This document shows, piece by piece, positions 16,542 to 38,678 of a DNA stretch of 64,000 nucleotides. A program made the position numbers and the translations under genes. The notes beneath the pieces were generated by a model. The model did no database searches, had not been told where the DNA came from, and saw only the letters and a program-made list of their open reading frames with translations. Positions within the stretch are counted from its first letter, which is position 1, and each line of letters opens with the position of its first letter. The stretch is from IMG/VR virus record IMGVR_UViG_3300013233_000093, positions 158,907-222,906 of that record. One strand, 5' to 3'.

Positions 16542-16724
16542 GTGAAGAGTATGAAATTAGATGTAGAGTCTCTACTGATCGCCGTTGTGGCGGTCGTTGT
16601 TCTTGTCGGGTGTTTTGCACCTGACGCTTCCACAGGTCGTACTTATAAAGAGTACGGCCCTTCTGAAACAGAAGCGGCGCAGTTGCGTCGCGATTATGGG
16701 CCTGCGAGGCCCAAAGGATATTAA
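16542..16724 (+). CDS. Small predicted lipoprotein
   Basis: Hydrophobic leader ending in LVGC lipobox. Confidence 0.65.
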   Translation: MKSMKLDVESLLIAVVAVVVLVGCFAPDASTGRTYKEYGPSETEAAQLRRDYGPARPKGY

Positions 16725-16726
16725 AA

Positions 16727-17536
16727 ATGTTTGTTGCCCGTAACTACAACGCCAAGGCTAGCATTAGCCTTGGCGTATTAACCAGTGAGGGGGATGTGTC
16801 TGTTGCACTGTCCCCCTCACTGAGAGGAGTGGAACACGGCTACGCAGTGATCGCCACTCTGCGGGGAGGTGCCATGAAAGCACTAGCCCCAGCTGGCCGT
16901 GTGCTGGAAGCCTGCACAGGTTTCCAGGTATTTACCAGAGATGGTAAATACCTTGTTCTAGGCACTGCTGTCGGTGACGACAGTGCTTATATCCGTCTCT
17001 TCAACCGCTATGGTAAAAACATAGCGGCCGTGTTCGAGGCGGGAGACGTAGATTCTTTTACGTTCTCCTCCTCATTTCTGGAGTCCATTATTAATGGACT
17101 CTTGGTGGCCTCTGGGAATTTTCCCAGAGAGTCACAGTGGGGGCGCAAGTCCTTCTCTTCCAAGACCAGCGATGGCTTGGATCCATGCATGCCCAAACTG
17201 GGCACCCAGAGCACCCAGGCGGGTACAATGCAGGTAAACGGTGATATGAAGAATATCACCATCGACATCACCACCCGTGAGGGGAAAGTGATGGCGTTGA
17301 AAGCGCTTAAGAAGCACACCCGCACCGCCTACAGTGTGTCCGACGATCTGTCCATGGTAGTATGTGCACAGCAAAACGCTGCGGGAGATCATTTCCGCAG
17401 TAAACTGTCAGTCTACACCTTCGGTGATGGAGAGTATCTCCACACCGCTACGGTGTGGCTGCCCGTCGATCACGACGGGGTTATGGGTCACACAGAAATG
17501 TGTGACCGGGTCGGCCACATGTTAAGAGGAGGCTAA
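16727..17536 (+). CDS. Hypothetical beta-rich protein, probable paralog of 12479
   Basis: AAGGA RBS; blade-like FTRDG and SVSDDL. Confidence 0.7.
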   Translation: MFVARNYNAKASISLGVLTSEGDVSVALSPSLRGVEHGYAVIATLRGGAMKALAPAGRVLEACTGFQVFTRDGKYLVLGTAVGDDSAYIRLFNRYGKNIAAVFEAGDVDSFTFSSSFLESIINGLLVASGNFPRESQWGRKSFSSKTSDGLDPCMPKLGTQSTQAGTMQVNGDMKNITIDITTREGKVMALKALKKHTRTAYSVSDDLSMVVCAQQNAAGDHFRSKLSVYTFGDGEYLHTATVWLPVDHDGVMGHTEMCDRVGHMLRGG

Positions 17537-17554
17537 ATATTGATGTTGGTTAGA

Positions 17555-17607
17555 TAGGTTGACGTTACATACGTCAACCTAGCCTATGTCTTTATTTTTT
17601 ATTTTTT
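17555..17607 (+). terminator. Stem-loop with TATG and T-run
   Basis: TAGGTTGACGT-tacat-ACGTCAACCTA. Confidence 0.7.
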
Positions 17608-18690
17608 ATGAGTACATACTTACAAGGCATCATAGACGGGGAACCTGCGAAGTTCTTTACGTCTGCATCTAAAAACGGTGACTGTGTTGTAACCTACGAT
17701 AACACAAGTGTCGGCGTATTGCACACTAAGTGCATCGTAAATTCCAGTTGGACTGCGTTACCTGATGTCACTGTCCCGACCGTTACGGGTGATAAGTTCA
17801 GTGGGCTGTTTGCAATAAGCGGAGACGGGCAGCGACTATTCACTGCGGGATACGCCGCGACAGGCACTGTAAACATTTACGTGCGTCAGAGAATCACGGC
17901 AGGTTGGGCATCTCCAATAAGCGTAATAACCACGGTTACTGCGTATGATTTACACACACAGCTTATTGTTTCTTATGACGGATCGTTAGTCGTTATCAAC
18001 AGCATAGACAATCTGACAAAGGCGTCTGAGTTCTATCTGTTTAAAGCCACTACGGCATGGCCTGCGATACCACACGTTATCACAGCAGATAGGATAAGTT
18101 GTAGTAACGATGGCACCCGTGTCGTCTGTGGCACTGCATGCGGGTTAACTGCTCGAGGTAAGGCAGACTTGCTTTACTACGATAATGGAACATGGCTTCC
18201 TCCTGTAAGTCTCGATGCCAAGCTCACTGGGCGATCGTCCACGCGGGACGGTTTAGTGACGATATCAGGGGACGGACTCACTGTGGTGTGCGCTGCGCTG
18301 TTAAACCCACCCAGGGGATCCACAGTAGGGACTTATTCACTTGTGCGATATCAACTGGCTGAAATCGGGAACGTCGCTTACGCGGGCGTTATAGGCGCCA
18401 GAACGGGATGCGGTATACAAGAGCTACCAGCAATCATCCAGAACATTGTGATCTGCACTCGCGGGGAGAACGTCCTTGTGTATGGAGTAGATGCTGCAGG
18501 CGGGATGGTCTCTGATCTGTACACGATGAAAGACGCGTTATGGCGGGTGATAAAAGCACCTGCTACCGTGGAACTTATTACCCTGCAATCTGTATCTGCA
18601 CCCAGAGCTTACGTATGCAATAACGCCGATGCGTACATGATTACCTATGCCACACCGAATGGTGTAGAACGATCCAGTATACTAAAGTGA
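17608..18690 (+). CDS. Stand-alone beta-propeller, degenerate FG-GAP-like
   Basis: AISGDG, IVSYDG, SCSNDG, TISGDG blade turns. Confidence 0.7.
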   Translation: MSTYLQGIIDGEPAKFFTSASKNGDCVVTYDNTSVGVLHTKCIVNSSWTALPDVTVPTVTGDKFSGLFAISGDGQRLFTAGYAATGTVNIYVRQRITAGWASPISVITTVTAYDLHTQLIVSYDGSLVVINSIDNLTKASEFYLFKATTAWPAIPHVITADRISCSNDGTRVVCGTACGLTARGKADLLYYDNGTWLPPVSLDAKLTGRSSTRDGLVTISGDGLTVVCAALLNPPRGSTVGTYSLVRYQLAEIGNVAYAGVIGARTGCGIQELPAIIQNIVICTRGENVLVYGVDAAGGMVSDLYTMKDALWRVIKAPATVELITLQSVSAPRAYVCNNADAYMITYATPNGVERSSILK

Positions 18691-18701
18691 GGTAAATAAG
18701 A

Positions 18702-19853
18702 ATGAGTATCTTTTATAAGCACCAAGTGTTTGAAGGTAATGCTGAAGTACAGGACATGGCCGTCTCCACCGACGGCACAATGTTGGTGATTGGTCGACCT
18801 GACCTGTCCAGTGTATCCATTTATGAGAAACTGGCTACTGTACCGACCTTTGATGTCCCTGTATCATTAGACATGCCTGAAAGAAGAAACTTCGGCTATG
18901 CAGTGGCGCTATCAGGTGATCTTAATACCATTGCAGTGGGTTACTCAGAAATAGCCGTAGAGGACACCTACATGGCTCCTGAGTTCACCCACGTGGTTAT
19001 GTTTATCCGCAATGATCTCGGCAACTGGATTGAAGACGGTGAGGTATCGGTAGGCTTAAACGGAGTAACTCCCGATACGATACGACTGTCGTTCGACGGA
19101 CTTACGTTAACCGTGGGCGGCAGTGACCTTGTGTATACACTTATAAAGGATCCCGTGAACGGCGATGTGTTGGATACGGAAGATCTTCCGCTTACCGCTC
19201 AGTTGTTTGAGCGATCGTTGGCTGATCCTTGGCATGCCGTAAAGGCGGTGCGGGCAGGCAACATAGACGGGCTACAGCAAGCGTTTGGCGGGAATGCGTG
19301 GACAGTGAATAACGTCGCTGGTGCAGTGGATGAGATGATGGTCTCTACTGAATGGCGTCATGGACCTGTGGCAGGCTGTCGTATGTACAGAGTAACGAAG
19401 AAAGCCGGTATTTGGACCGCGCCGGTTTTGGATGTATCCGCTATGGGCAGCGACATTGTTATGTCAGACGACATGACTGTAATGATCGTGTCTGTCACGT
19501 CTAACGTGCCACAGGCCGGTTTGTTTCATATGTACGCACGCACTCCAGGCGGTGCGTGGAGTGTGCCTACCGTGATCCTAAAGCCTCCTCTGGCAGATGA
19601 CCTGTTGTTTGCCCTTAACCTAGGAATGAGTTCTGATGGATTATGGCAGTCCGCTACAGCAAGGCATTACGATGCGCCATCAGGTAACGTATACGTATAT
19701 AAAGCAGGTGTGTATAACGGACGCATTGTAACCGGAGATGTCACGCGGACTTCGTTTGGTAAAATTACCAGATTGCCCTCATTACCACAGCCCGTAGTCT
19801 ACGTGTCGGACGGTTCTAATGTAAACCAGTATACTACTGTATTACCATTATAA
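18702..19853 (+). CDS. Stand-alone FG-GAP-like beta-propeller
   Basis: NFGYAVALSGDLNTIAVG, AVSTDG, LSFDG, GMSSDG, SGNVYVY. Confidence 0.75.
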   Translation: MSIFYKHQVFEGNAEVQDMAVSTDGTMLVIGRPDLSSVSIYEKLATVPTFDVPVSLDMPERRNFGYAVALSGDLNTIAVGYSEIAVEDTYMAPEFTHVVMFIRNDLGNWIEDGEVSVGLNGVTPDTIRLSFDGLTLTVGGSDLVYTLIKDPVNGDVLDTEDLPLTAQLFERSLADPWHAVKAVRAGNIDGLQQAFGGNAWTVNNVAGAVDEMMVSTEWRHGPVAGCRMYRVTKKAGIWTAPVLDVSAMGSDIVMSDDMTVMIVSVTSNVPQAGLFHMYARTPGGAWSVPTVILKPPLADDLLFALNLGMSSDGLWQSATARHYDAPSGNVYVYKAGVYNGRIVTGDVTRTSFGKITRLPSLPQPVVYVSDGSNVNQYTTVLPL

Positions 19854-19874
19854 CAATATAAAATCGGAGAGAAG

Positions 19875-20990
19875 ATGACTTACGCAGACAACGTCCGCAA
19901 ATGCATAGACATGGACATGAGCGCAGACGGACGCAGTTGCGTTACGCTGGACAGAGTGATGGATAATAAAGACGCCATCGGTACCCTACATCACCACACT
20001 TTGTTGGGCGGTGAATGGCACAACACCCGTACCTTTCAAATACCCACGTTGTTCAAGACATCTGTGTCGTATGAAACGGTACAGGCCGTGTGTATATCAG
20101 GAGACGGTAACGTAATGGCTGTGACGACCAATTTCAGTTATCGTGTATACGTCAAATCCTTATACGACGGCAACATTTGGATGCCTGTTATAACGCACTC
20201 TTATCGATACGATAAGATCGCCACGACACGAGGCGCCAGACCTACGCTAAGTTATACGGGCAACAAGCTTATGCTTTCCCCGATAGGACATACTCCTAAA
20301 CGATGTAGGTTAAAACTGGTATACCTCACGGCTAAGTTTGATTACAACCAAGTAGGTAAGTATAATGACTTATCCATAAACCCCACGTTTTACTGGGATG
20401 TAACTAACGTGGCCGTGAGTGAGATAAGTACGAGTTACATCGTCGGGATTATCACAGAAGCCACTGTACGTCAGGCGCGACATAAGGGCAATGGCGTGTT
20501 GCGTGTAGAGGACATCACAGGTCACCTGCAGAAAAAGATCCGTGATGTACGTCTGTACGGACTGTATGTGGAACCACGCAACATTTGCCATCATCAAGAT
20601 GAACGTGAAATGGCGTACATCAATGGCTTAGAAGGTGCGTTACACGTACTGCCATATGACACACAGAAGCAAGTCATCGTGACAGACATGCCGGACAATA
20701 CTGTCGCCACAGGCACGGTGTCTTCCAGCTTAGACGGTGATATCATCGCAGTGAGTGTGTGCAGATCCGGTACATACGGTTTACTCATATTTAAACGACG
20801 CGGTAGGGTATACGATGTGGCAAGGTTTGTGGATACCAATTCCAACGACGCCATTAACCCGATCGCTGTCTATAAGGTAAGTCCTTGTGGTAATCACTTG
20901 GACTACAGCGTCCCCACTAAAATAGACCCTGCTACAGGGGAACGTGGGGACTGGACACGCTTACAACTTAACATTGTTGAAAAGGATTAA
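19875..20990 (+). CDS. Stand-alone degenerate beta-propeller
   Basis: DMSADG, CISGDGNVMAV, SSLDGDIIAV. Confidence 0.7.
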   Translation: MTYADNVRKCIDMDMSADGRSCVTLDRVMDNKDAIGTLHHHTLLGGEWHNTRTFQIPTLFKTSVSYETVQAVCISGDGNVMAVTTNFSYRVYVKSLYDGNIWMPVITHSYRYDKIATTRGARPTLSYTGNKLMLSPIGHTPKRCRLKLVYLTAKFDYNQVGKYNDLSINPTFYWDVTNVAVSEISTSYIVGIITEATVRQARHKGNGVLRVEDITGHLQKKIRDVRLYGLYVEPRNICHHQDEREMAYINGLEGALHVLPYDTQKQVIVTDMPDNTVATGTVSSSLDGDIIAVSVCRSGTYGLLIFKRRGRVYDVARFVDTNSNDAINPIAVYKVSPCGNHLDYSVPTKIDPATGERGDWTRLQLNIVEKD

Positions 20991-20992
20991 AC

Positions 20993-21985
20993 ATGCATAC
21001 AGAATCAATTCGCATTACCGAGTTAGCTGAGTTCGCAAGTGATACGTTCAGCAGTAATGCAATGGATTTATCCAGTGACGGTAAAACCGTGGTGACGATT
21101 ACACCCGACCAGAAACACGCGGTTGTATTGGTTGTGATGAATAAGCACAGGCGTAAATGGTCTAAGGTCGCAGAAGTGACACTGCACGGATGTAACTATG
21201 ACGATGCCAGTGTAAGCATCAGTCCGGATGGATTGCGTGTTGCGGTGGGTCTACCTGGAGATGACGTTGTGTATGTCTATCGCTTATACGTGCACGGCGT
21301 GAAACCACTTACATGCATATGTCGTCTACATCGTCCGAACTCCATGATCGTACACGGATTTGGTTGCGTCGTAGCCATTCGATTGGTTAACGAAAAGTAT
21401 CGTTTGTTTACGACTGCGTACTGCATGCAAATGCATGCGTATGAATTCGATGATAAAGATGCCGCTAAGTGCGTTCGTACTGGGACGCTGCAAGCACCTA
21501 TGACACCTAACGCGTACTACGACATCTTTGCCAATCATGACGGGTCACGTGTCACAGTTATAACAGGATCTACTGCTACCGTGATGACCGGCGAATTGAT
21601 GACATTGGAGATGATTGCGTTACCATCGACTGTGGATCGTGCGTGTGCAGCAGACAGTGACGTGGCCGTGGTCTCTTCTGGAGATAACCTGTATCATACA
21701 CGCTATAATGCAGAGAGCAAGGAGGCCAAGGAGGTGCTAGACGATCCACTGGCCATCAGTGTGGATGTGTCTGCCAACTACGATGGCACGGTCTTAATAA
21801 ACGCCATGCGCAGTAAGATGGTGGTGTACGATTATAAAGCCGATCTCGTCACCCATGTGGGGTTGTTACGCCCAGATGTGAACGGGATGACGGGTAGATG
21901 TACTATGGCAGGTGCATCACGTGCATGTGCTGGCATGCATCAGTTACGTGCTGGCGGAAGTGTGTTATCAATAGCGGAATGGTGA
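20993..21985 (+). CDS. Stand-alone degenerate beta-propeller
   Basis: DLSSDG, SISPDGLRVAVGLP, FGCVVAI, ANYDG. Confidence 0.7.
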   Translation: MHTESIRITELAEFASDTFSSNAMDLSSDGKTVVTITPDQKHAVVLVVMNKHRRKWSKVAEVTLHGCNYDDASVSISPDGLRVAVGLPGDDVVYVYRLYVHGVKPLTCICRLHRPNSMIVHGFGCVVAIRLVNEKYRLFTTAYCMQMHAYEFDDKDAAKCVRTGTLQAPMTPNAYYDIFANHDGSRVTVITGSTATVMTGELMTLEMIALPSTVDRACAADSDVAVVSSGDNLYHTRYNAESKEAKEVLDDPLAISVDVSANYDGTVLINAMRSKMVVYDYKADLVTHVGLLRPDVNGMTGRCTMAGASRACAGMHQLRAGGSVLSIAEW

Positions 21986-21986
21986 T

Positions 21987-22904
21987 ATGGATTCTCAAGT
22001 AAGACGCAAGTCCCTTGCTGTGGTGGCGATGAACAAAAAGTTATCGTCTAACATCATCGAGTGCTCCCCCGTAGAACAGATCCGTCTTATGGACGGTGAG
22101 TTAGACGTGGGCACGGAAGATGTGGTCAGCAGTGGGATCGACCGGGATAACAATGTATACACTGCCAGTATAAAGATGGGTGTGACTGTGGAGGCGGAAT
22201 GGTGGCCTGAGACCAACCGTCCCACACCGCCTGACGTCCGCCGTGGAGAGACTGTATGGCTATGGCATACCGGAGACAGTAATAAGTTTTACTGGGAGTC
22301 TACGGGAGCCTATGACGACCTCAGACGTCTAGAGACCATCGTCTTTCGCTTATCTGGATTACCCGATAACGCAGATGAGAAGTTAGATGCCAGTAATACG
22401 TACTGGATAGAATGGTCTACTCATAAGAAGATGGTGACGTTACATACTTCTATGCGTAACGGTGAGAAGGCAGGTTACACATTACAACTTAACACGGGTG
22501 ATGGTCAGGCTACGCTGGAGGATAATGAAGGTAATATAGTTCAGTTGGATACAGCAGCCACACACATCTGGGCGCGTAACATAAAAGACAGCATCTTTGA
22601 GTTACTTAAAGGTGATATACGCGCGTCCGTCCCAGGCGGGTCGGAGATCTTTATGAAGGACGGAGACATCCTTACTCATAACGGCCATGGCGTAGAGTTT
22701 AACATGGTAGGTGGAAACACAATCCACAAGATGCCAGGTAACTACATCATAAACGCGACGAACATGATCGTGAATGCAAAGACCATGCACAACAAACCTG
22801 TAATTGGCGGAAAGGCCACTTACGGTAAGATCAGTGTAGGAAGCATCTCTGGTGGTAAGGGGTCATTTGGCCTGTTGCTTGCTGGTAAGTTTAACTATCC
22901 ATAG
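21987..22904 (+). CDS. Baseplate central spike (phiKZ gp164-like)
   Basis: NRPTPPDVRRGETVWLW...FYW and RRLET motifs; beta-helix-like C-terminus. Confidence 0.7.
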   Translation: MDSQVRRKSLAVVAMNKKLSSNIIECSPVEQIRLMDGELDVGTEDVVSSGIDRDNNVYTASIKMGVTVEAEWWPETNRPTPPDVRRGETVWLWHTGDSNKFYWESTGAYDDLRRLETIVFRLSGLPDNADEKLDASNTYWIEWSTHKKMVTLHTSMRNGEKAGYTLQLNTGDGQATLEDNEGNIVQLDTAATHIWARNIKDSIFELLKGDIRASVPGGSEIFMKDGDILTHNGHGVEFNMVGGNTIHKMPGNYIINATNMIVNAKTMHNKPVIGGKATYGKISVGSISGGKGSFGLLLAGKFNYP

Positions 22905-22956: not shown

Positions 22957-23493
22957 CTACTGTGATATATGCGCCATCAGTTCTTCCAGCTCTTCCGGAT
23001 GGTGTATGTTAAACACCGGGATCTTAGCATGATTGGCGACTCGCATCTCTAAGAAGGTGATTGTAGGACTGTACGCGACCACGAATTCAGAACGTGACTG
23101 TGCGCCTACTAACTCTTCATCTCCTAATACAGATAACGTTTTAGCTACTGACTTAAGACGATCTTCTTTAGACCCCCGTAGCAGATTACTGTCAAGCTTG
23201 TTGCTGTCCAAGTGTCGGACTACTTGATGTTCTTCTGTTGTGGTGGGCACCCAGCAATGTGCATTGTGTTGATTCTTGATTCGAGGCGCTGTCTTAGAAT
23301 AACTCCATATCTCGTGACTGCCGTTGGCCATTAATGCGCCGTTGACAAACTCCTCTGCGACGCCTTCTGTGCCGTTATGTCTAAGAGTGTAACCCATCTT
23401 AGCCAACCGACTTGAAATGCCGTGTATGGCCTCTGTGATGTGCTTAGGGGCAGACGTCGCGCATCCTGCACCTGTATAGAATTTTTCACTCAT
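22957..23493 (-). CDS. DprA/Smf (SLOG)-like protein, degenerate
   Basis: YTGAG...P, LAKMGYTLR, SEFVVAYS, A...KIPVFNI. Confidence 0.65.
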   Translation of the reverse strand: MSEKFYTGAGCATSAPKHITEAIHGISSRLAKMGYTLRHNGTEGVAEEFVNGALMANGSHEIWSYSKTAPRIKNQHNAHCWVPTTTEEHQVVRHLDSNKLDSNLLRGSKEDRLKSVAKTLSVLGDEELVGAQSRSEFVVAYSPTITFLEMRVANHAKIPVFNIHHPEELEELMAHISQ

Positions 23494-24637: not shown

Positions 24638-25900
24638 TTACAAGACTCCGCAATCCACAGGTCCGACGTATATCGTGTCGGGGTATACCGGTGGTGCACG
24701 GTTTGGATCTATTGGCAAACAGTTTACAATGTCGCTGTCTACGAATGGGAATCCGCCGATAACGCTGCTGCTGTCTGTAACGTCTCCGCTATCTGTGCTG
24801 TCGCCTGAGCTATCGTCGGTGCTGTCGGTGGTGTCTACCACCACAGAGTCATCACTGATAACGCTGCTGCTGTCACTCTCGGTAGCTGTGTCTGCGACGA
24901 CCGTGTCGTCCACACCGGCCTCTACCAGGATGTCGTCTCCAGATACAACCTCGGCAGTACCGCTAGTTGTGTCTGTGGAGGTGCTGTCCGTAGAAGTACT
25001 GTCTGTGCTATCTGTACTGTCACTTGACGTACTATCGGTACTATCCGTAGTGTCAGTAGTGGTGTTATCTGTAACCGTTTCCACCGTGTTATCGGACGTC
25101 TCTACTGTGTCAGTGGTCACTGTAGAAGAACCGTCTGCCTCCACCACCGTGGTTACGGTCTCTGTGGTATACACAGTAGTGACTGGATGATTTGCCAAAT
25201 GCGCTGCCAGTGATTCTTCAGCAGCGATCACCCTAGCAGTAAGCTTAACGTTCTCTTCCACACATGCATGGATGGCAGAAAACATCTGACTCATGTCTTC
25301 CCGCAACCGTCCCATAATTTTTATGGTTCTGCTGTCCTGCTCTTTAAGGGCAAGTCCAGCTAGATTTAACGGGCGTGACTCCACAAGCGATTGCTGCAGT
25401 CCCAACACACTGTCCCGTAACGGATTAAGGTGCGTGATTTGCGATAGTGGATGCGTGTGATCCTCTGGTGTAAACCCGCCGGGTATCTCAGTTAGATTGT
25501 TAAACGAGACGGACGTGGTTTTAACCGCATCGATCGTGGCACGCAGATCCATGATCAGTTGGTTACTGCGACCTTCCACACCACCGACTGCCTGATAGGT
25601 TAACAGTACTTTACTGTATACTCCGGGGTTTGTGATGTGGATTGCCGTGGCGGTTTCTATGCCAGTGGCCAAGGTGATGTCTGCATCTATGCTGTAAAAG
25701 TCATAGTCCGTACCAAGTAACAGAGGGACGCTAACGCCTTCTGCTCGCAGTATCAACCCTGGCGTGTACATGAGACCGTGGTTGGCCACGATAATGTACG
25801 CCGTAGTGGCAGATACCTCATGTAACTCATCTACGATGTAGTTGGAGGGGTTAGCCGCCGTACCATCGTATCTGTATTTTAAGGCGTTTACGACAGACAT
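24638..25900 (-). CDS. Virion structural (tail/baseplate) protein with Ser/Thr/Asp-rich tail
   Basis: YRYDGTAANPSNYIVDELH, TYQAVGG, FTPEDHTH; N-terminus shared with 35966 and 37692 (phiKZ-type tail family). Confidence 0.75.
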   Translation of the reverse strand: MSVVNALKYRYDGTAANPSNYIVDELHEVSATTAYIIVANHGLMYTPGLILRAEGVSVPLLLGTDYDFYSIDADITLATGIETATAIHITNPGVYSKVLLTYQAVGGVEGRSNQLIMDLRATIDAVKTTSVSFNNLTEIPGGFTPEDHTHPLSQITHLNPLRDSVLGLQQSLVESRPLNLAGLALKEQDSRTIKIMGRLREDMSQMFSAIHACVEENVKLTARVIAAEESLAAHLANHPVTTVYTTETVTTVVEADGSSTVTTDTVETSDNTVETVTDNTTTDTTDSTDSTSSDSTDSTDSTSTDSTSTDTTSGTAEVVSGDDILVEAGVDDTVVADTATESDSSSVISDDSVVVDTTDSTDDSSGDSTDSGDVTDSSSVIGGFPFVDSDIVNCLPIDPNRAPPVYPDTIYVGPVDCGVL

Positions 25901-26479: not shown

Positions 26480-28213
26480 TTAACCCAGCACGTGTACTAA
26501 GCCGGTGTTCAAACCAGCCGCGTCGTTCCCTGTGCTACCGGCCAACCCACGAATGCCAGACAAGTCAACAGACACGTCGTGTCCGAAACTGTCCCCGCTC
26601 AGTGAACTGGCTGATACGATAGACGCAGTGTTGCCCCAGACAGAAGCTGTATTTAGATACACTAAAACCATGCCTGTTTCAACGGCTGCGTTATCTTGAA
26701 ACGGAGCGCCAACAAGTAACGTCAAACCGTCACCTGATAGTGCCACCGAGGTCCCAAAGTTTGCACCCAGCTCAACGGTGGGCGCTTCTATCTTTGTAAC
26801 TGCAGTCCATACGGACGTTGTGTTACTGTAAATGTACACACCACCGGCACCGGCCAGTGTAGCGTCATCTGCATTAGCGCCAATGGCACACGTAAGCCCG
26901 TCGTTTGAGATGGACACCGCAAAGCCAAAGTGATCGTTAGCGGTTACGCTTAGATCTGTCAATTCAGACGTAAGGCTCCATGCACCAGCAGCCAGTGTGT
27001 ATACTTCCGCTTTACCTGCACCTACTCCTGCAGTAGAGTCATAGGGAGACCCCACTACCAGATTGTTGGCGAGGCCGTCGACGTCGACTGCGTGACCAAA
27101 GTACCCGTCAGCGATAGCCACTGGCGGTGCAATACCTGCGGTCTGTGTCCACACACCTAAGGCGTCTTTCGTGAACACGTACACATAGCCCGCCGTCGTG
27201 ACCGGGATCACGCCCACTGTTTTAGTAGGTGATCCAATTACCACGCAGTTACCTGCGGTGTTTACACTCACACTGTAGCCGAACCATCCGATGTCTGTGT
27301 GATCCAATGGCACCAGTGATGTATCCAGTGTCCAGACACTGCCTGTGCGTTTATACACATGTACCGCACCAGCACCGACTACGTTATTGACATTACTGTT
27401 ACCATACGCACCCACGGTTAAAACATCGCCCGTTTCGTTAAGAGACACGTCACAACCAAAGTATGCGCTGGCTTGTCCAAGCGGATGCATGAGTTTTTCT
27501 TTCTCTACCCAAATACCTGCGACTTGTTCATAAAGAAACACGGCGCCTGAGTCTAGTCCGAGTGTGTCGTCCAGATACATACCTACAGCTGCGTACACGC
27601 CGTTTCCAGAGATAGCAGTGGCATTGCCATACTGACCGCCTAAAGACGGCGTAGAGGGCACCAGCGTCCCTACAGTGCCTGTGATGTCCAACGCTTCCAC
27701 GGTGAACGACGTCACAGGACCAAACTCAGAGACCACGCCGTTACTGCCTTCGTAACTTACACGAGCAAAGTATTGAGTGGTGGCGTTTAGTGTAACGCCC
27801 AGCGCACCCAAATCCACTGTGTTACTGGTACTCACGGTTCTACCACTGTCGTACACTACGTTGGTAAATGTAACGTCTAACGCAAGCACCAGGCGATAAG
27901 CCACTTGGGTGTCTGAGTTATAGTTTACATCCACGCCCGTAAAGGAAGACAGTGTGATGATTGGAGAGGGCACTACGTTTAACGCACCGTTAACTGGCAC
28001 CGTTACCTTGGGAGGCGCCACGCCTGTTAAGATAGACGAGGTAATCGCCTGACCACCGGGTGTACTGCCGTCGTGAATGTGAATCACGGGCGCCGCTGTA
28101 TCGGTATAATCAATCACCATTTCATTTAGAGGACCTGTGTAGGCGCCGTTAGCGCCTGCCGTAAACGTGCGTTTCCACAGCCACGGCTCGGTCATTTGTT
28201 TTTCGCCAGCCAT
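26480..28213 (-). CDS. Tail fibre/adhesin: Mtd_N-like + FN3-like + FG-GAP propeller
   Basis: YTGPLNEMVID...IHDGSTPGG; QYFARVSY; seven (F/Y)G..V.lS..G...vGA blades. Confidence 0.85.
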   Translation of the reverse strand: MAGEKQMTEPWLWKRTFTAGANGAYTGPLNEMVIDYTDTAAPVIHIHDGSTPGGQAITSSILTGVAPPKVTVPVNGALNVVPSPIITLSSFTGVDVNYNSDTQVAYRLVLALDVTFTNVVYDSGRTVSTSNTVDLGALGVTLNATTQYFARVSYEGSNGVVSEFGPVTSFTVEALDITGTVGTLVPSTPSLGGQYGNATAISGNGVYAAVGMYLDDTLGLDSGAVFLYEQVAGIWVEKEKLMHPLGQASAYFGCDVSLNETGDVLTVGAYGNSNVNNVVGAGAVHVYKRTGSVWTLDTSLVPLDHTDIGWFGYSVSVNTAGNCVVIGSPTKTVGVIPVTTAGYVYVFTKDALGVWTQTAGIAPPVAIADGYFGHAVDVDGLANNLVVGSPYDSTAGVGAGKAEVYTLAAGAWSLTSELTDLSVTANDHFGFAVSISNDGLTCAIGANADDATLAGAGGVYIYSNTTSVWTAVTKIEAPTVELGANFGTSVALSGDGLTLLVGAPFQDNAAVETGMVLVYLNTASVWGNTASIVSASSLSGDSFGHDVSVDLSGIRGLAGSTGNDAAGLNTGLVHVLG

Positions 28214-28222
28214 TAACCTCTC

Positions 28223-29902
28223 CTAAGCGTATGTGTATACCGCACCGGCTTCGTTACCGTTAGTGCCTTCACCGAAAGCACCCACTGCACCGACAGAACC
28301 GTCTGCTGATAATGATGTTGAAATACCCACGTAATCGTAGGACGTTGCGTTACTTGCGGAAACAGAGGTGCCAGCTTGCACCCACGTGCCTGTGGCTTTA
28401 GAGAAAATACTAAAGTCACCTGCGTACACGTTAGCCCCATACGCACCTGCAATGATTAACAGCCCGTCACCTGAGATGGCAACCGAACGACCAAACGCAT
28501 CGCTTGCAGATAACCCGGAAGGCACCAGTCGTGTACCACTGTCCCATGCACCGTTAACGGTATCGTAAGTGAATACGTATATCGCGCCTGCAGAAGTCGC
28601 AGTGGCATCTTCACCGTACGCACCGATTACAACAGTATTACCGTCAGTAGACGAATCCACCGAGTAACCAAAGTATCCGTAAAGCTCGGGAGTGGGTGGG
28701 TAGAGTACATCGTCTTCGTTATAACCACCACCGCCATCGGGTGAGAATACGAACACGGCACCTGCGTCGGTTTGACCTGCATCGTCGGACAAATAAGCGC
28801 CCACGAACAAGCGTGACGCATCCCCCGCCATAGACACAGACGTCCCAAAGCGATCGCCGGTAGTGGTGTTATTAGCCAACACTTCGTTTTCTTTGCCGTC
28901 TGTAAAATCGCGGTTATCGGGATCCCACGTATAAACAGCACCGCTGGAGTTACCATTAGCTGGATTAAGGTCGGAACCTGCTGCTAACCATAAACCGTCA
29001 TCAGAGATGGATACTGAAATGCCTAACTGGTCATCTTGATTACCCGTAGCCAGCATTTTTACATCTTCACTCCAGTTGTTCCCGCCGCCGCCGTCTAGGA
29101 AGATATAGATAGCGCCTTCTGCGGGAGCATTACCGCCATCGTGCATATAAGCACCAACCGCCAGTACATCACCCACGTCGTTCAACGACACAGAGTAACC
29201 AAAGAAATCGCCAGATTGTGTATCGCTGCCTGTAAATGCCGCGTCCTCGATCCATTTCAAGGTAGGTGCATCCCATTTATAGATATACACCTTACCGCCG
29301 TCAGTACCAGCATCAGTTTGCAAGTACGAACCTACGGCTAATGTCAGTCCATCGGCAGACAATGCCACCGACTGTCCAAAGCGATCGCCGCCAGCAGCAT
29401 CACTGGCGTAAACGATGTCTGTCTCTGTAGACAAGACATCTGCCAATGTGCTAAAGGAAATCACAGGTGACCATGAGGACAACGGTGCAAGGTTGGATTC
29501 ATAGCGCACTTGGATGTAGTACGTAGTACCTTGGATTAACGTAAGTCCTAACGAGGTTAAATCCAACGACGTTAGGTTCGCGGTATCACGGGACGTATCC
29601 ACGACTAACGTGGACATGGCTGCGTCTGTAGCCACTCGCCAGTAAGAGGCCACGTGCGTGCCGTCTCCTGACATTGTACTTGCGGTTACAACAGGAGCAG
29701 TGGTAAACCCACCAGCACCGTCCAGTGGGGAAGTCACGGAAGGAGCTGTAATGGCAAACCCTACTGGGTCTAACGAGACACCACCCGCCACTGTATTTTG
29801 AATCAACAACTGTCCCTTGCCTTCCCGAACAAGCAACTCGCCATACTCGCCTGCTTTAGCGGGCGCTTCTAAGGCAGTCAACGGATGTAGTTTTACTCGC
29901 AT
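28223..29902 (-). CDS. Tail fibre/adhesin: Mtd_N-like + FN3-like + FG-GAP propeller
   Basis: GELLV; TTYYIQVRY...SSWS; repeated FG.SV.LS.DG..L.VGA. Confidence 0.85.
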   Translation of the reverse strand: MRVKLHPLTALEAPAKAGEYGELLVREGKGQLLIQNTVAGGVSLDPVGFAITAPSVTSPLDGAGGFTTAPVVTASTMSGDGTHVASYWRVATDAAMSTLVVDTSRDTANLTSLDLTSLGLTLIQGTTYYIQVRYESNLAPLSSWSPVISFSTLADVLSTETDIVYASDAAGGDRFGQSVALSADGLTLAVGSYLQTDAGTDGGKVYIYKWDAPTLKWIEDAAFTGSDTQSGDFFGYSVSLNDVGDVLAVGAYMHDGGNAPAEGAIYIFLDGGGGNNWSEDVKMLATGNQDDQLGISVSISDDGLWLAAGSDLNPANGNSSGAVYTWDPDNRDFTDGKENEVLANNTTTGDRFGTSVSMAGDASRLFVGAYLSDDAGQTDAGAVFVFSPDGGGGYNEDDVLYPPTPELYGYFGYSVDSSTDGNTVVIGAYGEDATATSAGAIYVFTYDTVNGAWDSGTRLVPSGLSASDAFGRSVAISGDGLLIIAGAYGANVYAGDFSIFSKATGTWVQAGTSVSASNATSYDYVGISTSLSADGSVGAVGAFGEGTNGNEAGAVYTYA

Positions 29903-29912
29903 GACATCTCCC

Positions 29913-30623
29913 CTAAAGCGCTAAAGCATCTGCAATAGCTGTGGTAAAACGCTGTGATACGTTAATGTCTTGTAACGCAGGAAGATCTCCTGTGGAGACC
30001 GCCAAGTTCATCTGGATCTCCAACTCACCACGCACCTTATAACCCAGTGCGTAACGAGTAAGGATCGCACGATACAGCTCAGTAGCCGCAGTGCTGTCCG
30101 CGATGTCCAAAGAAGCAGATGCATTACGATCCGCCAGATGTCCTGGTGTGTTTAGATTGACTACTGCTTTGGCACGCCAAGTAGTGGCGGCTGCCCAGCC
30201 TGCAGTAAAGGCATCCATCAGATCTTTCGCGTCAGACTTAGCCGCGCCGTCGTGTGAGATCATCACTCCGCTGTAAGGCAGTCGAGTGGTGATGTACCGT
30301 TTATGCACGGCTTTCAACTCACGCAGTTTTACGTCCAACAACTCTTCGGCAGTCATATCCACTGCACTGTAGTTGATTGTAATGGTTGAATCGTTTTCTT
30401 CTCTACCGATCACCCGTAGACGTTGGTTTGGGCTTACAGGCGGCTTATTAGCCACGACCTGTTTTACAACCAGATGGTCTCCGATGGCAGCGCCACCGTG
30501 GATGGATCCTGGCACCAGGTTAGGGTCAATGCCGTTTCGTGCAGCCAGGTCACGCACTGCGATGGGATCGTATTCCACAGGACCCATAACACGTTTACCA
30601 CTTCTAAAAATTTCGCACAACAC
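29913..30623 (-). CDS. Probable tail fibre assembly protein (DUF4376-like)
   Basis: Between fibre genes; LLDVKLRELKA...TWR helical C-half. Confidence 0.5.
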   Translation of the reverse strand: MLCEIFRSGKRVMGPVEYDPIAVRDLAARNGIDPNLVPGSIHGGAAIGDHLVVKQVVANKPPVSPNQRLRVIGREENDSTITINYSAVDMTAEELLDVKLRELKAVHKRYITTRLPYSGVMISHDGAAKSDAKDLMDAFTAGWAAATTWRAKAVVNLNTPGHLADRNASASLDIADSTAATELYRAILTRYALGYKVRGELEIQMNLAVSTGDLPALQDINVSQRFTTAIADALAL

Positions 30624-30635
30624 GTTATACCACTC

Positions 30636-32354
30636 CTATCCGAATAAAATAACACCGCCGCCGTTTACAACGACGCTTGCATCTGATGCAGCACCTGCTG
30701 CTAATGTATCGCCACGATCGCTTACCGCCAGAGAACTGCCCAGCTTACCGCTGGCACCTACTGTGGTGCTGGTTAAGGTCACGGTCTCTATCCAGTTATT
30801 GGACAGATCTTTACTGAACATATAGATACTGCCCGCATCCACGCCGCCTGCTACTGTGTCTTTAAGACGCGCAGATACGAAGAGTTGGTCGCTGGTGGAT
30901 GTGAACACAAGCGCACCGCCAAAGGCATCGCCGAGTACGGTGGTCGCGGGCTTTAACAATCCATATTCTGTCCAGACACTGTTAATGTCCTTTCTATACA
31001 AATGCACTGTCCCTGTCTCTGTGCCGATCCCGCCTTCAGTGGGTGCGCCTACAGCGATCACACTGGCATCCGGACTGATGCAGACACTAAGGCCAAACTG
31101 TCCGTCTGCTTGTGGTGTAGACGATGTCAACGCGACTTCCGTCCACACACCTAAGACTTGCTCAAACACATACGCATCACCGGTCTTACCGGATGCTGCT
31201 CCGTGATATGTACCAATCACAATTACTTTCTTGTCATCCGACACACTTAGAGAGTACCCGAACTGTGCGGCTGTGACTTGTACCGCAGGCGTTAACACAC
31301 CTTTGTTATACCAGTCGTTTGCAGCATCCACTTCAAAGATTTGTGCAGTGCCCAGGGCGGTTGAATTACGCTCACCCACCACGACCATTGTGCCGTCAGA
31401 AGACACAGTCAGTGAACTGCCAAATAACGCAGATGCCACAGGAGTGTTAGACACCACTGTTTTCTCTAGTGTGTATGCGCCGTTTACTCTACGGTAGATA
31501 TGCACTTGTCCTGCGTTAGTGACCACGGAGCCGTTTACCACTGGATCTCCCAGTGCTTCAGATATAACAAGTACTTGTCCGTCATTAGACATGGCCATGG
31601 CCTGTCCAAAGTAACTGTATGTTACACCGGCGGGTGAGAAGATGCGTTGTGTCTCCACGTAAGCGTTGTTTACCAATTCACTGATATAGACAGATCCAGT
31701 ATCAATGATGGCGTTACCGTCTTCGTATGGCGCTCCTGTGGCCATAATGCTGCCATCGCCAGAGAGGGCTACTGAAGAACCAAAGAAATCATCTGCTGCT
31801 GCATCGGACGCCACAACGTGTGCTAATTCAGCTGTGGGATACGCCAACGCTACGGTAAAGCTTACAGGCGCACTCCAGTCAGACATTACCCCTGCAATAG
31901 AAGTATACCGCACTCTAGCGTAATACGTACCTACTGATAGTGGCGAGTTAAGACTGGCTACATCGAACTGCGTTAAAGCAGTATAAGACTCTGGTATATT
32001 AGCTACCAGGTTTTTCATTGTTACGTCGGTGGCGATTTCCCAAAAGGCAGTGGCTTGCTGTGCTACAGATTTATCACTGTTGATTCCTTCGAAAGGAACT
32101 GCAGATAACATAGGTTCTGGATGCACGCCTGTACTGCCTTCCACAGGCGTCACCATGATGGGTGTTACTACACCACCAATGCCAGTGCCCATCGCCGGAT
32201 AACCGCCTGGTGTAACGCCGTCACCCAAGCGTAAGCGAGGGGTGATATCACGACGATCTACAAACAACTCATCCTTTAACTGGATGTTGTTGAATAAGTC
32301 CGTCGCGTTAAACGAGTTTAAAACTACCGGCTGTGTTAAGAATACAGTAGGCAT
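30636..32354 (-). CDS. Tail fibre/adhesin: Mtd_N-like + FN3-like + FG-GAP propeller
   Basis: LRLGDGVTPGG; GTYYARVRY...SDWS; FFGSSVALSGDG...GAP repeats. Confidence 0.85.
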   Translation of the reverse strand: MPTVFLTQPVVLNSFNATDLFNNIQLKDELFVDRRDITPRLRLGDGVTPGGYPAMGTGIGGVVTPIMVTPVEGSTGVHPEPMLSAVPFEGINSDKSVAQQATAFWEIATDVTMKNLVANIPESYTALTQFDVASLNSPLSVGTYYARVRYTSIAGVMSDWSAPVSFTVALAYPTAELAHVVASDAAADDFFGSSVALSGDGSIMATGAPYEDGNAIIDTGSVYISELVNNAYVETQRIFSPAGVTYSYFGQAMAMSNDGQVLVISEALGDPVVNGSVVTNAGQVHIYRRVNGAYTLEKTVVSNTPVASALFGSSLTVSSDGTMVVVGERNSTALGTAQIFEVDAANDWYNKGVLTPAVQVTAAQFGYSLSVSDDKKVIVIGTYHGAASGKTGDAYVFEQVLGVWTEVALTSSTPQADGQFGLSVCISPDASVIAVGAPTEGGIGTETGTVHLYRKDINSVWTEYGLLKPATTVLGDAFGGALVFTSTSDQLFVSARLKDTVAGGVDAGSIYMFSKDLSNNWIETVTLTSTTVGASGKLGSSLAVSDRGDTLAAGAASDASVVVNGGGVILFG

Positions 32355-37690: not shown

Positions 37691-37691
37691 T

Positions 37692-38678
37692 TTAATCACT
37701 CACTTTAAGTAACGTCAGCGCACAAGACACGTTAATGTCTGCGACGACAATGGATTCCACAGTAGCGTCAGGGATACGGATCTGCATGGTTATAACACGA
37801 CCTGCTGTAATGCCCACTGGACTTACGCCCAATGTAGAAGCAGAAACCGCATAGCCGTCTATCAAGTACCGAAACTCGTAATGTTGCCGTACACCGTTTA
37901 ACAGCGCTCTTGGATTACCTGATAAAAACACCAGATAGTTGCCTGTGTATTTTACCAACACACTGACACCTACGTCTACCCATTCATTCATAGTGACCAA
38001 TGGAAGCTGTTTTAACACCGTGCCGGTAGAACCGCCTGTGTGATAAAACGCAGTCGCTGCTGCTAACTGTCCAATGGCCAATGAAACGTTTTTCATGGAG
38101 TCTACAATAGGCGCTACTAACGTCGTATCCAGATCCACTATATCACTCATTGTAATATGACGGTCTGGTGATCTTACTGCTAATGACAACGTTTCAAAGG
38201 CAGCCAATATTTCTGGCACACCTGTGATGGTGGTCAGGGGTGTATTGTGGGGTGTAGGGGGGAAGGTCGCAGGGATGTCTGTCAGACTGCTCCAAGGTGT
38301 GTTTATCAACTCACCTAATGTACTAAGACCGTCTGCTAATGCAGTGGTCATGGCATTGACGTAATCGCCGCCCAGCGTCCGATAAACCAACCGATATGAC
38401 CCCGTGGCCGCTAGGTTGTAAAAACCTATGGCACCGTAAATAGGGAATCCCGTCTCTATTGAAGCCTCTTCAAAGGGGTAAGCAAAGAAGAAATCACTGC
38501 CTTCGGAAATAGGCATACCTGACTCTGCATCTACCACCACCATGCTGCTTGCAAAGAAGGGTGCTGCGTCTGGAATAAGGTAATTATATTGCGTTCCGTT
38601 TATGGCCGTGATTGTATGAAGTTCATTAGGGATTTTGTTACCCGGTATTACCCCCAATGGATCGAAGTCATATGGCAT
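37692..38678 (-). CDS. Virion structural (tail) protein, phiKZ-type family
   Basis: YDFDPLG..PGNKIPNELH, PDAAPFFA, YRTLGG, FPPTPH. Confidence 0.8.
   Translation of the reverse strand: MPYDFDPLGVIPGNKIPNELHTITAINGTQYNYLIPDAAPFFASSMVVVDAESGMPISEGSDFFFAYPFEEASIETGFPIYGAIGFYNLAATGSYRLVYRTLGGDYVNAMTTALADGLSTLGELINTPWSSLTDIPATFPPTPHNTPLTTITGVPEILAAFETLSLAVRSPDRHITMSDIVDLDTTLVAPIVDSMKNVSLAIGQLAAATAFYHTGGSTGTVLKQLPLVTMNEWVDVGVSVLVKYTGNYLVFLSGNPRALLNGVRQHYEFRYLIDGYAVSASTLGVSPVGITAGRVITMQIRIPDATVESIVVADINVSCALTLLKVSD

What the first reader, a model, noticed from the sequence alone, without database searches (positions are those of the whole stretch)
17608..21985. Four anchorless, variably degenerate FG-GAP-like propellers in line with the spike gene
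Seen: four 330-383 aa ORFs with the S-x-D-G blade turn of the fibres at 26.5-32.4 kb but no Mtd_N/FN3 part and no signal peptide; 18702 is near consensus, the others eroded; the last stops 1 nt before the spike start. Inference: with the three full fibres this gives seven propellers: baseplate-docked receptor heads, fibre chaperones, decoys, or a reservoir for domain swapping.
Basis: partly seen in the sequence, partly recalled or inferred. Interest (0 to 1): 0.65.

Follow-up and report, generated by a model that had tools for sequence, protein, structure and literature searches.

The report
Four standalone propeller genes before spike
A giant phage carries four separate, strongly diverged seven-bladed propeller proteins in a row just before its tail-spike gene; they are relatives of its fibre heads and a small clade of phages keeps them, but their job, most likely extra binding parts of the tail tip, has not been shown.

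Summary
Window 17608-21985 has four co-directional, tightly packed ORFs (360, 383, 371, 330 aa). They end 1 nt before the central-spike gene (21987-22904) of a 222.9-kb phiKZ-like jumbo phage.

All four are standalone seven-bladed beta-propellers of the FG-GAP_2 kind, related to the heads of the three fibres at 26.5-32.4 kb:
- A blade HMM built from the fibres ranks them 4th, 5th, 8th and 11th of 329 genome ORFs.
- B hits bona fide FG-GAP_2 proteins in an exhaustive search.
- AlphaFold (B, D) and ESM Atlas models (A, C) are seven-bladed propellers whose nearest neighbours are FG-GAP_2.

One correction: none reaches Pfam's cut-off. Even 18702 (19.3 bits against a cut-off of 23) is far from consensus.

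They are not decaying copies. The cassette is conserved in three other metagenomic jumbo-phage contigs. A and B form distinct orthologous families at 24-35% identity, against 54-57% for the spike, and the degree of erosion goes with position in the cassette.

There is no DNA-level similarity to the fibres, so a recombination reservoir is unlikely.

Function is not shown. My best guess (about 0.4) is virion accessory binding modules docked non-covalently at the baseplate. The rivals are an intracellular scaffold or an assembly factor. Interest is moderate to low.

The parts
17608..18690 (+). ORF A (P0001, 360 aa): standalone seven-bladed propeller, the most eroded of the four paralog families.
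   Evidence: Blade HMM 8.1 bits (1 of 500 shuffles reaches it). The ESM Atlas's own model has pTM 0.75, and all 10 structural neighbours are FG-GAP_2 propellers (TM 0.64-0.73). The family profile (A plus 2 orthologues) hits the fibre heads at E 3.5e-5. Orthologues in L011 and L012/13 are 24-25% identical.
18702..19853 (+). ORF B (P0002, 383 aa): standalone seven-bladed propeller, the least eroded of the four.
   Evidence: Pfam FG-GAP_2 19.3 bits, below the cut-off of 23. Blade HMM 30.8 bits. The exhaustive HMMER search gave 87 hits: two full-length kin (35% identity, 3e-49; 29%, 1e-16), and the 8 of the remaining hits that were scanned against Pfam are all bona fide FG-GAP_2 proteins, down to E 3e-12. 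AlphaFold2 pLDDT 85, pTM 0.88. VIA Z 27 to integrin alpha propellers over 341-347 residues.
19875..20990 (+). ORF C (P0003, 371 aa): standalone propeller with no orthologue detectable by sequence.
   Evidence: Blade HMM 13.4 bits (0 of 500 shuffles). The ESM Atlas's own model has pTM 0.61, and its best neighbours are FG-GAP_2 propellers of phages (TM 0.77 over 333 residues). Only weak profile links exist (E 2.5e-4 to 1e-3). Positional counterparts in L011 and L012 are also blade-positive (13.5 and 19.7 bits).
20993..21985 (+). ORF D (P0004, 330 aa): standalone propeller; its stop ends 1 nt before the spike start.
   Evidence: Blade HMM 20.6 bits. AlphaFold2 pLDDT 73, pTM 0.78, with 27 strands. 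The best atlas matches are FG-GAP_2 clusters (TM 0.81-0.83) against 0.74 for WD40. It is 28% identical over 150 aa to L012/13 D. Junction sequence.
21987..22904 (+). Central spike / baseplate assembly protein (P0005, 305 aa), the last gene of the co-directional block.
   Evidence: phrog_3216 at 1e-66. tblastn hits in 290 phiKZ-like jumbo phages, some annotated as central spike or baseplate assembly protein. 54-57% identical to the syntenic genes of L011, L012 and L013.
16727..17536 (+). ORF u (269 aa): conserved upstream neighbour of A; not shown to be a propeller.
   Evidence: It has a positional homologue in L011 (22% identity, E 3e-4). Blade HMM gives only 4.2 bits, and its family profile hits nothing else.
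17557..17607 (+). Leader of A: a perfect 9-bp hairpin (17557-17579), TATG (17585-17588) and a T-rich run up to the ATG. There is no Shine-Dalgarno sequence.
   Evidence: Read directly. TATG is the phiKZ late-promoter core (PMC4666361) but it is too short to be diagnostic. B, C and D have GAGG, GGAG and AGGA upstream.
26480..32354 (-). Three fibre genes (577, 559 and 572 aa), each with a shared N-terminal part of about 160-180 aa and a 7-blade FG-GAP_2 head. These are the anchored relatives of A-D.
   Evidence: Pfam FG-GAP_2 at 1.4e-42, 2.2e-56 and 5.3e-30. There are 17 blade matches in the genome, all in these three genes. The N-terminal parts resemble only each other (31-33% identity).

Best explanation
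Shown (about 0.9): A-D are four real, paralogous genes. Each encodes nothing but a seven-bladed FG-GAP_2-type beta-propeller. They come from the same stock as the heads of the phage's three fibres. They lack the fibres' N-terminal part, a signal peptide and a membrane segment. They are packed in one co-directional block that ends in the central-spike gene of a phiKZ-like jumbo phage. The block is an old, conserved cassette of a small clade, and its members evolve several times faster than the spike or the fibres.

Inferred (the confidence figure refers to this part): they are made together with the spike as tail-tip components. They sit non-covalently on the periphery of the baseplate or fibre network. 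There they act as extra binding modules for host-surface ligands, one specificity per paralog. New copies arise from fibre heads that lose their anchor and then diverge under host-driven selection.
For: Fold and homology:
- Blade HMM ranks and shuffles.
- B against 1.8 billion proteins hits FG-GAP_2 proteins.
- Family profiles of A, B and D hit the fibre heads at E 3.5e-5, 5e-12 and 1e-13 to 4.5e-28.
- AlphaFold2 models of B and D.
- ESM Atlas models of A and C.
- Structure neighbours.

Real, maintained genes:
- The syntenic cassette u-A-B-C-(D)-spike, followed by fibres on the opposite strand, is present in three other contigs of 176-204 kb.
- The A and B families are each monophyletic (SH-aLRT 97 and 99).
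- Erosion goes with position: A 2-9 bits, B 13.5-31, C 13-20, D 21-154.

Fast evolution: A 24-25%, B 27-33% and D 28% over 150 aa, against 54-57% for the spike and 34-49% for the fibres. Terminal branches are 1.8-4.4 for A, C and D (B 0.97) against 0.5-1.5 for the fibres.

Birth from fibre heads: the anchorless D-slot protein of L012 scores 154 bits and is 33% identical to its own genome's fibre F1 head.

Linkage to the tail tip:
- Spacers are 1-21 nt, with Shine-Dalgarno sites before B, C and D.
- No copy of the genome's extended promoter-like motif lies between window 9930 and the spike.

Analogy:
- The seven-bladed propeller of phiKZ gp131 sits at the distal end of baseplate fibres and is proposed to bind the host (PMC13250141).
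- A standalone 407-aa FG-GAP propeller of cyanophage S-TIM5 is annotated as a virion structural protein.
- FG-GAP_2 propellers elsewhere are heads on trimeric phage-tail stalks, flagellin surface inserts and giant-virus capsid or C1q fusions.
Against: - There is no evidence of virion presence, expression timing or any binding partner.
- No anchor or docking motif was identified.
- The one docking test (D with a spike trimer, residues 120-305) gave no answer (score 0.00).
- The genes upstream on the same strand are small unknown ORFs, and in relatives they are nucleotide-metabolism genes (ligase, thymidylate synthase). The block therefore lies at a module border, and linkage to the spike could be incidental.
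- In L011 an extended promoter-like motif lies 1.6 kb upstream of A with no obvious break, so early or middle expression is possible.
- D is absent from L011, so adjacency of D and the spike is not conserved.
- Other phiKZ-like phages have no such cassette next to the spike.
- The AlphaFold models of B and D were built on alignments dominated by FG-GAP_2 proteins, which leans them towards that fold. The ESM models of A and C are free of that bias.
Confidence: 0.4

Rival explanations
1. Non-virion intracellular proteins. On this view the propellers act inside the infected cell as protein-protein interaction platforms (host takeover, counter-defence, or organising replication or assembly sites), and their place before the spike gene is a matter of genome layout.
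For: - They have no anchor, no signal peptide and no membrane segment.
- The block borders a non-structural region on the same strand.
- L011 has a promoter-like motif of the kind found before small-ORF clusters 1.6 kb upstream of A.
- Fast divergence fits an arms race with host defences as well as it fits one with receptors.
- The same genome has further blade-bearing small proteins, four with C-terminal membrane tails, in a non-structural region.
Against: - All characterised or annotated contexts of FG-GAP_2 propellers seen here are extracellular or virion-surface.
- Packing with the spike is tight: 1-2 nt spacers for C/D and D/spike.
- Their nearest kin in the same genome are fibre heads.
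Confidence: 0.25
2. Assembly factors. On this view the propellers help fold, trimerise or mount the fibres or the spike complex and are absent from the finished virion.
For: They are co-directional with the spike and close to the fibre genes. Homology to the fibre heads could allow transient heteromeric contacts. The number of copies (3-4) is similar to the number of fibre genes (3) in each genome.
Against: - Known fibre chaperones are usually small and encoded just downstream of their fibre. Here a conserved 236-aa ORF already sits between the fibre genes (29913-30623; 31% identical in L011).
- I know of no propeller-type fibre chaperone (my own knowledge).
- A chaperone would be expected to co-evolve at the pace of its client, yet A-D diverge much faster than the fibres.
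Confidence: 0.15
3. Decaying duplicates, or a silent reservoir of propeller cassettes for recombination into the fibre genes.
For: Blade motifs are variably eroded. The proteins are homologous to the fibre heads. The third and fourth slots of the cassette vary between genomes.
Against: - The ORFs are intact and of conserved length in four genomes despite 65-75% sequence divergence.
- The A and B families each keep family-specific invariant residues.
- Erosion is position-specific, not random.
- There is no nucleotide similarity to the fibres or among the four ORFs that could support homologous exchange (best E 0.24).
- B, C and D have Shine-Dalgarno sites.
Confidence: 0.05
4. Decoys. On this view the free propellers are released at lysis, occupy host receptors or soak up host or competitor factors, and so limit superinfection or loss of progeny on debris.
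For: They are soluble and anchorless, homologous to the presumed receptor-binding heads, and fast-evolving.
Against: There is no precedent that I know of and no specific evidence. The heads of A-D differ so much from the fibre heads (about 20-25% identity) that a shared ligand is doubtful.
Confidence: 0.05

Closest known systems
Pfam FG-GAP_2 (PF14312) seven-bladed propellers, including the heads of this phage's own three fibres
   Same: They share the seven-bladed fold, the blade motif (FG)...S-x-D-G...VG at a period of about 50-57 aa, and significant sequence links.
   Different: None of A-D reaches the Pfam cut-off. Only 3-5 of 7 blades keep a recognisable motif. Blades are shorter (47-55 aa). 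No stalk, anchor or any other domain is attached.
phiKZ gp131 and its paralogs gp132-135 (baseplate fibre proteins; the gp131 C-terminal domain is a seven-bladed propeller)
   Same: Both are in a phiKZ-like jumbo phage and form a paralog family around the baseplate. Both have a seven-bladed propeller proposed to contact the host (PMC13250141).
   Different: The gp131 family is defined by a shared N-terminal docking domain with differing C-termini. A-D are the reverse: a shared propeller and no N-terminal domain. B and fibre F2 have no sequence match to any PDB chain, so kinship with gp131 is not shown.
Standalone FG-GAP propellers of other phages, for example cyanophage S-TIM5 gp054 (407 aa, annotated virion structural protein) and ESM Atlas clusters of phage proteins of about 322 and 466 aa
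   Same: These are single-domain FG-GAP_2 propellers encoded by tailed phages, sometimes away from the structural module.
   Different: Those are single genes with canonical repeats. Here there are four strongly diverged paralogs in tandem, joined to the spike gene. The S-TIM5 label is the record's annotation, and I could not read the paper behind it.
Integrin alpha-subunit beta-propeller (classical FG-GAP)
   Same: It gives the longest structural superposition with the B model: Z 25-27, with 335-347 of 383 residues aligned.
   Different: WD40 propellers score equally well (Z 25-27). Identity is 10-13%. The match shows the fold only, not function or close kinship.

Membership tests
FG-GAP_2 (PF14312) | Whole-protein score at or above Pfam's gathering cut-off (23 bits) | tested here: not met
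   B scores 19.3 bits (E 0.0013). A, C and D have no hit at E <= 1. The three fibres score 104-188 bits.
FG-GAP_2 (PF14312) | Significant sequence similarity to bona fide members | tested here: met
   B: 87 library hits at E <= 1e-3, and all 8 of the non-orthologue hits scanned against Pfam carry FG-GAP_2. D family profile against the fibre heads: 1e-13 to 4.5e-28. B family: 5e-12. A family: 3.5e-5. C is only weakly linked (2.5e-4 to 1e-3) and rests mainly on structure.
FG-GAP_2 (PF14312) | Seven-bladed beta-propeller fold | tested here: met
   AlphaFold2 gives B pLDDT 85 / pTM 0.88 and D pLDDT 73 / pTM 0.78. The ESM Atlas's own models give A pTM 0.75 and C pTM 0.61. All match seven-bladed propellers, and the nearest neighbours are FG-GAP_2 clusters.
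FG-GAP_2 (PF14312) | Blade motif repeated in every blade | tested here: inconclusive
   3-5 of 7 blades per protein give any match to the blade HMM, and the best blade scores 5-17 bits against 43-66 in the fibres. The S-x-D-G turn is kept best in blades 1 and 2.
phiKZ gp131-type baseplate fibre | gp131-like N-terminal domain that docks into the fibre base | tested here: not met
   A-D begin with blade 1 (motif at residue 16-27) and cannot be extended upstream. The fibres' N-terminal parts match nothing else in the genome.
phiKZ gp131-type baseplate fibre | Sequence kinship of the propeller with the gp131 C-terminal domain | tested here: not met
   phmmer of B (E <= 1) and of fibre F2 (E <= 0.01) against all PDB chains found nothing. 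gp131 did not appear among the listed structural matches. A direct structural comparison was not made.
phiKZ gp131-type baseplate fibre | Location in the virion at the baseplate periphery | not testable with these tools
   The genome is a metagenomic record with no proteome or map.
Central spike of contractile tails (phrog_3216; phiKZ gp164-like), for the neighbouring gene 21987-22904 | Profile match over the N-terminal OB-fold part, with homologues annotated as spike in phiKZ-like phages | tested here: met
   phrog_3216 at 1e-66 over residues 2-224. 290 phage records match, some annotated as central spike or baseplate assembly protein.

The most novel reading that the evidence does not exclude
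The cassette is a set of receptor-binding heads supplied in trans. On this reading, propellers that have lost their covalent stalk are recruited non-covalently to the spike or baseplate complex. Host range is then tuned by a birth-and-death series of free heads spun off from the fibre genes, a modular arrangement not described for contractile-tailed phages.
Probability: 0.15. Interest if true: 0.6.

Novelty: new member of a known kind. Interest (0 to 1): 0.35.

Why it matters
Jumbo phages of the phiKZ type have very elaborate baseplates, and it is poorly known what decides which hosts they infect. If these free propellers turn out to be virion parts, they would add a class of host-binding modules that attach without a fibre stalk, and they would show how such modules are born from fibre heads. 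If they act inside the cell, they would be an example of a surface-binding fold put to another use. In either case the result gives four fast-evolving orphan families a fold and a lineage, and it defines a conserved cassette that can be tested once a member of the clade is cultured.

Tried and rejected
- PHROGs found nothing for A-D or for the fibres.
- The word-index protein search found only the query itself for A and for B. C and D were not searched this way.
- Megablast of the region and tblastn of B against 50,697 phage records found nothing.
- Pattern scans of IMG/VR with B and with the spike found nothing. With a spike alignment they returned only the two known relatives and one distant phage without the cassette.
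- Two metagenome scans, one with the spike alignment and one with the B-family alignment, found nothing.
- Sequence search of the PDB with B and with fibre F2 found nothing.
- Single-sequence hhalign was uninformative.
- Complex prediction with D and three copies of spike residues 120-305 gave no answer (score 0.00, controls not run). This is evidence neither for nor against binding.
- The S-TIM5 paper could not be fetched by DOI.
- The sigma-70 promoter and terminator scan gave no more sites than shuffles.
- ORF u as a fifth propeller was rejected: 4.2 bits, and its family profile hits nothing.
- The small ORFs that sit inside the cassette in relatives (86, 65, 129 and 112 aa) have no counterpart here or in each other.
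- The careful maximum-likelihood tree did not finish. Only the quick tree is reported, and the placement of the long branches (C, D) is unsure.

Full report
**Setting**

The window is the last 64 kb of a 222,906-bp virus record with direct terminal repeats.

The gene at 21987-22904 matches PHROG 3216, baseplate assembly / central spike, at 1e-66. By tblastn it finds 290 phage records, nearly all phiKZ-like jumbo phages of Pseudomonas, Erwinia, Vibrio and Xanthomonas, at up to 42% identity. The phage is therefore a distant, uncultured relative of the phiKZ group. In phiKZ itself the homologous protein gp164 is the trimeric central spike of the baseplate (PMC13250141).

**The observation**

| ORF | Coordinates | Length (aa) |
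|---|---|---|
| A | 17608-18690 | 360 |
| B | 18702-19853 | 383 |
| C | 19875-20990 | 371 |
| D | 20993-21985 | 330 |

- All are on the + strand. The spacers are 11, 21, 2 and 1 nt.
- D's TGA ends at 21985 and the spike ATG starts at 21987.
- B, C and D have GAGG, GGAG and AGGA just upstream.
- Each ORF begins at the first start codon after a stop, so there is no hidden N-terminal extension.
- Hydropathy shows no signal peptide or membrane segment.
- S/T-x-D/N-G turns in the context typical of FG-GAP_2 blades recur every 50 residues or so. The first is at residue 16-27 in all four.
- The three genes at 26480-32354 (- strand) are true seven-blade FG-GAP_2 proteins, with Pfam E 5e-30 to 2e-56. 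All 17 genome matches to that Pfam model lie in these three genes.

**Is the resemblance more than chance?**

Pfam reports only a sub-threshold hit for B (19.3 bits against a cut-off of 23) and nothing for A, C or D.

I built a blade HMM from the 17 fibre blades and scored every ORF of 100 aa or more in the genome:

| Protein(s) | Blade HMM score (bits) | Rank of 329 ORFs |
|---|---|---|
| Three fibres | 271-361 | 1-3 |
| B | 30.8 | 4 |
| D | 20.6 | 5 |
| C | 13.4 | 8 |
| A | 8.1 | 11 |

- Unrelated ORFs stay near 2 bits or below.
- Out of 500 shuffles of each protein, 0, 0, 0 and 1 reach the observed scores of B, D, C and A.
'Near consensus' for 18702 is too strong: its best blade scores 17 bits against 43-66 for fibre blades.

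**Fold and family**

- B: an exhaustive HMMER search against 1.8 billion representatives gave 87 hits at E <= 1e-3. Two are full-length kin (35% identity at 3e-49; 29% at 1e-16). Among the rest, the eight I checked against Pfam are all bona fide FG-GAP_2 proteins.
- B model: AlphaFold2 gives a seven-bladed propeller (pLDDT 85, pTM 0.88). Integrin alpha propellers give the longest superposition (Z 27, 341-347 residues), tied in Z with WD40 propellers. Among viral models its best matches are mainly giant-virus surface-type proteins, with FG-GAP-annotated giant-virus and phage proteins and a 393-aa phage 'hemagglutinin' further down the list.
- D model: also a seven-bladed propeller (pLDDT 73, pTM 0.78). 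It is closest to FG-GAP_2 clusters (TM 0.81-0.83, against 0.74 for WD40).
- Bias caveat: these two models used alignments rich in FG-GAP_2 proteins, which biases them.
- A and C: the ESM Atlas's own single-sequence models are free of that bias and say the same. For A, pTM is 0.75 and all ten neighbours are FG-GAP_2 (TM 0.64-0.73). For C, pTM is 0.61 and the best neighbours are phage and flagellin-insert FG-GAP_2 propellers (TM 0.76-0.77).
- Family profiles hit the fibre heads at E 1e-13 to 4.5e-28 (D family), 5e-12 (B family) and 3.5e-5 (A family). C is linked only weakly.

**Relatives**

- B's two kin lie on JGI metagenome contigs of 204, 197.5 and 176 kb.
- All three contigs show the same layout. 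The order is a u-like ORF, A (353/358 aa), B (375/383 aa), a third propeller-like ORF (345/381 aa), in two of them a fourth (377/405 aa), then the spike (306/307 aa). Fibre genes of the FG-GAP_2 type follow on the opposite strand.
- Identities to the window:

| Protein | Identity to relatives |
|---|---|
| Spike | 54-57% |
| Fibres | 34-49% |
| B | 27-33% |
| A | 24-25% |
| D | 28% over 150 aa |
| C | none detectable |

- In a quick maximum-likelihood tree the A and B families are each monophyletic (SH-aLRT 97 and 99). Terminal branches of A, C and D are 1.8-4.4 changes per site (B 0.97), against 0.5-1.5 for the fibres. The places of C and D are unsure.
- The degree of erosion goes with the slot: A 2-9 bits, B 13.5-31, C 13-20, D 21-154.
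- The D-slot protein of L012 is nearly canonical (154 bits). It is 33% identical to the head of its own genome's fibre F1, closer than to the window's D. That looks like a younger anchorless copy spun off a fibre gene.
- A more distant phage (spike 38% identical) and cultured phiKZ-like phages have no such cassette. In those, a divergent gene of about 825 aa abuts the spike. Its homologue here lies at genome position 16618-19110, far from the spike gene.

**What this excludes**

- Decay is excluded. Intact, length-conserved ORFs persist through 65-75% divergence in four genomes, the families keep invariant residues of their own, and erosion is position-specific.
- A recombination reservoir is unlikely. 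Sensitive blastn finds no similarity between the cassette and the fibres, among the four ORFs, or with anything else in the genome (best E 0.24).

**Expression context**

- The genome carries 24 near-exact copies of a long promoter-like motif (core ACTATATCACTATTATGA), all on the + strand and mostly 20-75 nt before small-ORF clusters.
- phiKZ early promoters are likewise an extended conserved element, whereas late ones are just TATG (PMC4666361).
- The last copy before the cassette is at window 9930. None lies between there and the spike.
- A hairpin with a T-run lies at 16576-16596. Another hairpin lies at 17557-17579, followed by TATG and a T-rich leader before A.
- This fits a separate, later transcription unit running from u or A to the spike, but it does not prove it. 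In L011 a variant of the long motif lies 1.6 kb upstream of A with no evident break.
- No read data could be obtained.

**Mechanism**

What is shown is identity, not function.

I favour (0.4) virion accessory binding modules made with the spike and docked non-covalently at the tail tip. The grounds are:
- the tight packing with the spike gene;
- kinship with the fibre heads;
- the consistently extracellular or virion-surface contexts of FG-GAP_2 propellers;
- the phiKZ gp131 precedent;
- a standalone FG-GAP propeller annotated as a virion protein in cyanophage S-TIM5;
- receptor-binding-protein-like evolutionary rates.

Against this: no partner is known, the single docking test gave no answer, and the block lies at a module border.

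The rivals are an intracellular interaction platform (0.25), an assembly factor (0.15), decoys (0.05) and decay or a recombination reservoir (0.05).

**Comparison and novelty**

- A-D are strongly diverged members of the FG-GAP_2 propeller superfamily that fail Pfam's own threshold.
- They are not gp131-type fibres, because the defining N-terminal docking domain is absent.
- Standalone phage FG-GAP_2 propellers already exist as large uncharacterised clusters. This is therefore a new member of a known kind in a new arrangement: a tandem, conserved cassette joined to the spike gene.
- Interest is moderate to low. It would rise if the trans-docking reading were confirmed.

Noticed in passing
G000:C1:137731-140339 (+), outside the window, 18.6-21.2 kb before its start; also G000:C1:141663-143082: Four consecutive short ORFs (241, 195, 198 and 170 aa) each carry 1-3 S/T-x-D/N-G blade motifs (blade HMM up to 18 bits) and a strongly hydrophobic C-terminal tail. 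They look like tail-anchored partial propellers. Two further blade-positive ORFs without a tail follow. No counterpart was seen at the syntenic place in L011.
   Followed up: partly
window 1087, 5043, 8066, 9930, 40019, 55220 (start of the 20-nt core; 24 near-exact copies genome-wide, all on the + strand): A promoter-like motif of about 28 nt (core ACTATATCACTATTATGA) lies mostly 20-75 nt before small-ORF clusters, often followed by a short hairpin. It resembles the extended early-promoter element of phiKZ-like phages. L011 has a variant at 2222, 6007 and 7280.
   Followed up: partly
window 19851-19877: B and C are in the same reading frame, separated by TAA and 21 nt with no further stop. Read-through of that stop would give a double-propeller fusion. 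Nothing suggests that this happens.
   Followed up: no
L012:12955-14088 (+) and L013:12871-14088 (+): The anchorless propeller in the slot before the spike of these relatives is nearly canonical (154 bits, 6 blades). It is 33% identical to the head of its own genome's fibre F1, closer than to the window's D. This suggests repeated birth of free heads from fibre genes.
   Followed up: partly
G000:C1:16618-19110 (+), outside the window: In PhiEaH1, Vibrio phage Yong and L017 a gene of about 825 aa lies divergently next to the spike gene. Its homologue here lies at genome position 16618-19110, far from the spike gene, so the spike locus was rearranged in this clade.
   Followed up: partly
window 29913-30623 (-): A 236-aa ORF is wedged between fibre genes F2 and F3 and is conserved in the relatives (31% and 23% identity). 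It has no family match and is a candidate fibre assembly or linker protein.
   Followed up: no
window 24638-25900 (-) and 35966-37699 (-): Two proteins share an N-terminal domain of about 100-160 aa. In the first it matches phrog_2163, virion structural protein. They may be a second family of baseplate or fibre proteins with a common docking end, as in phiKZ gp131-135.
   Followed up: no
window 22957-23493 (-): A DprA-like gene (phrog_768, 1.8e-9) sits on the opposite strand between the spike gene and the fibre block, an odd neighbour within a tail module.
   Followed up: no
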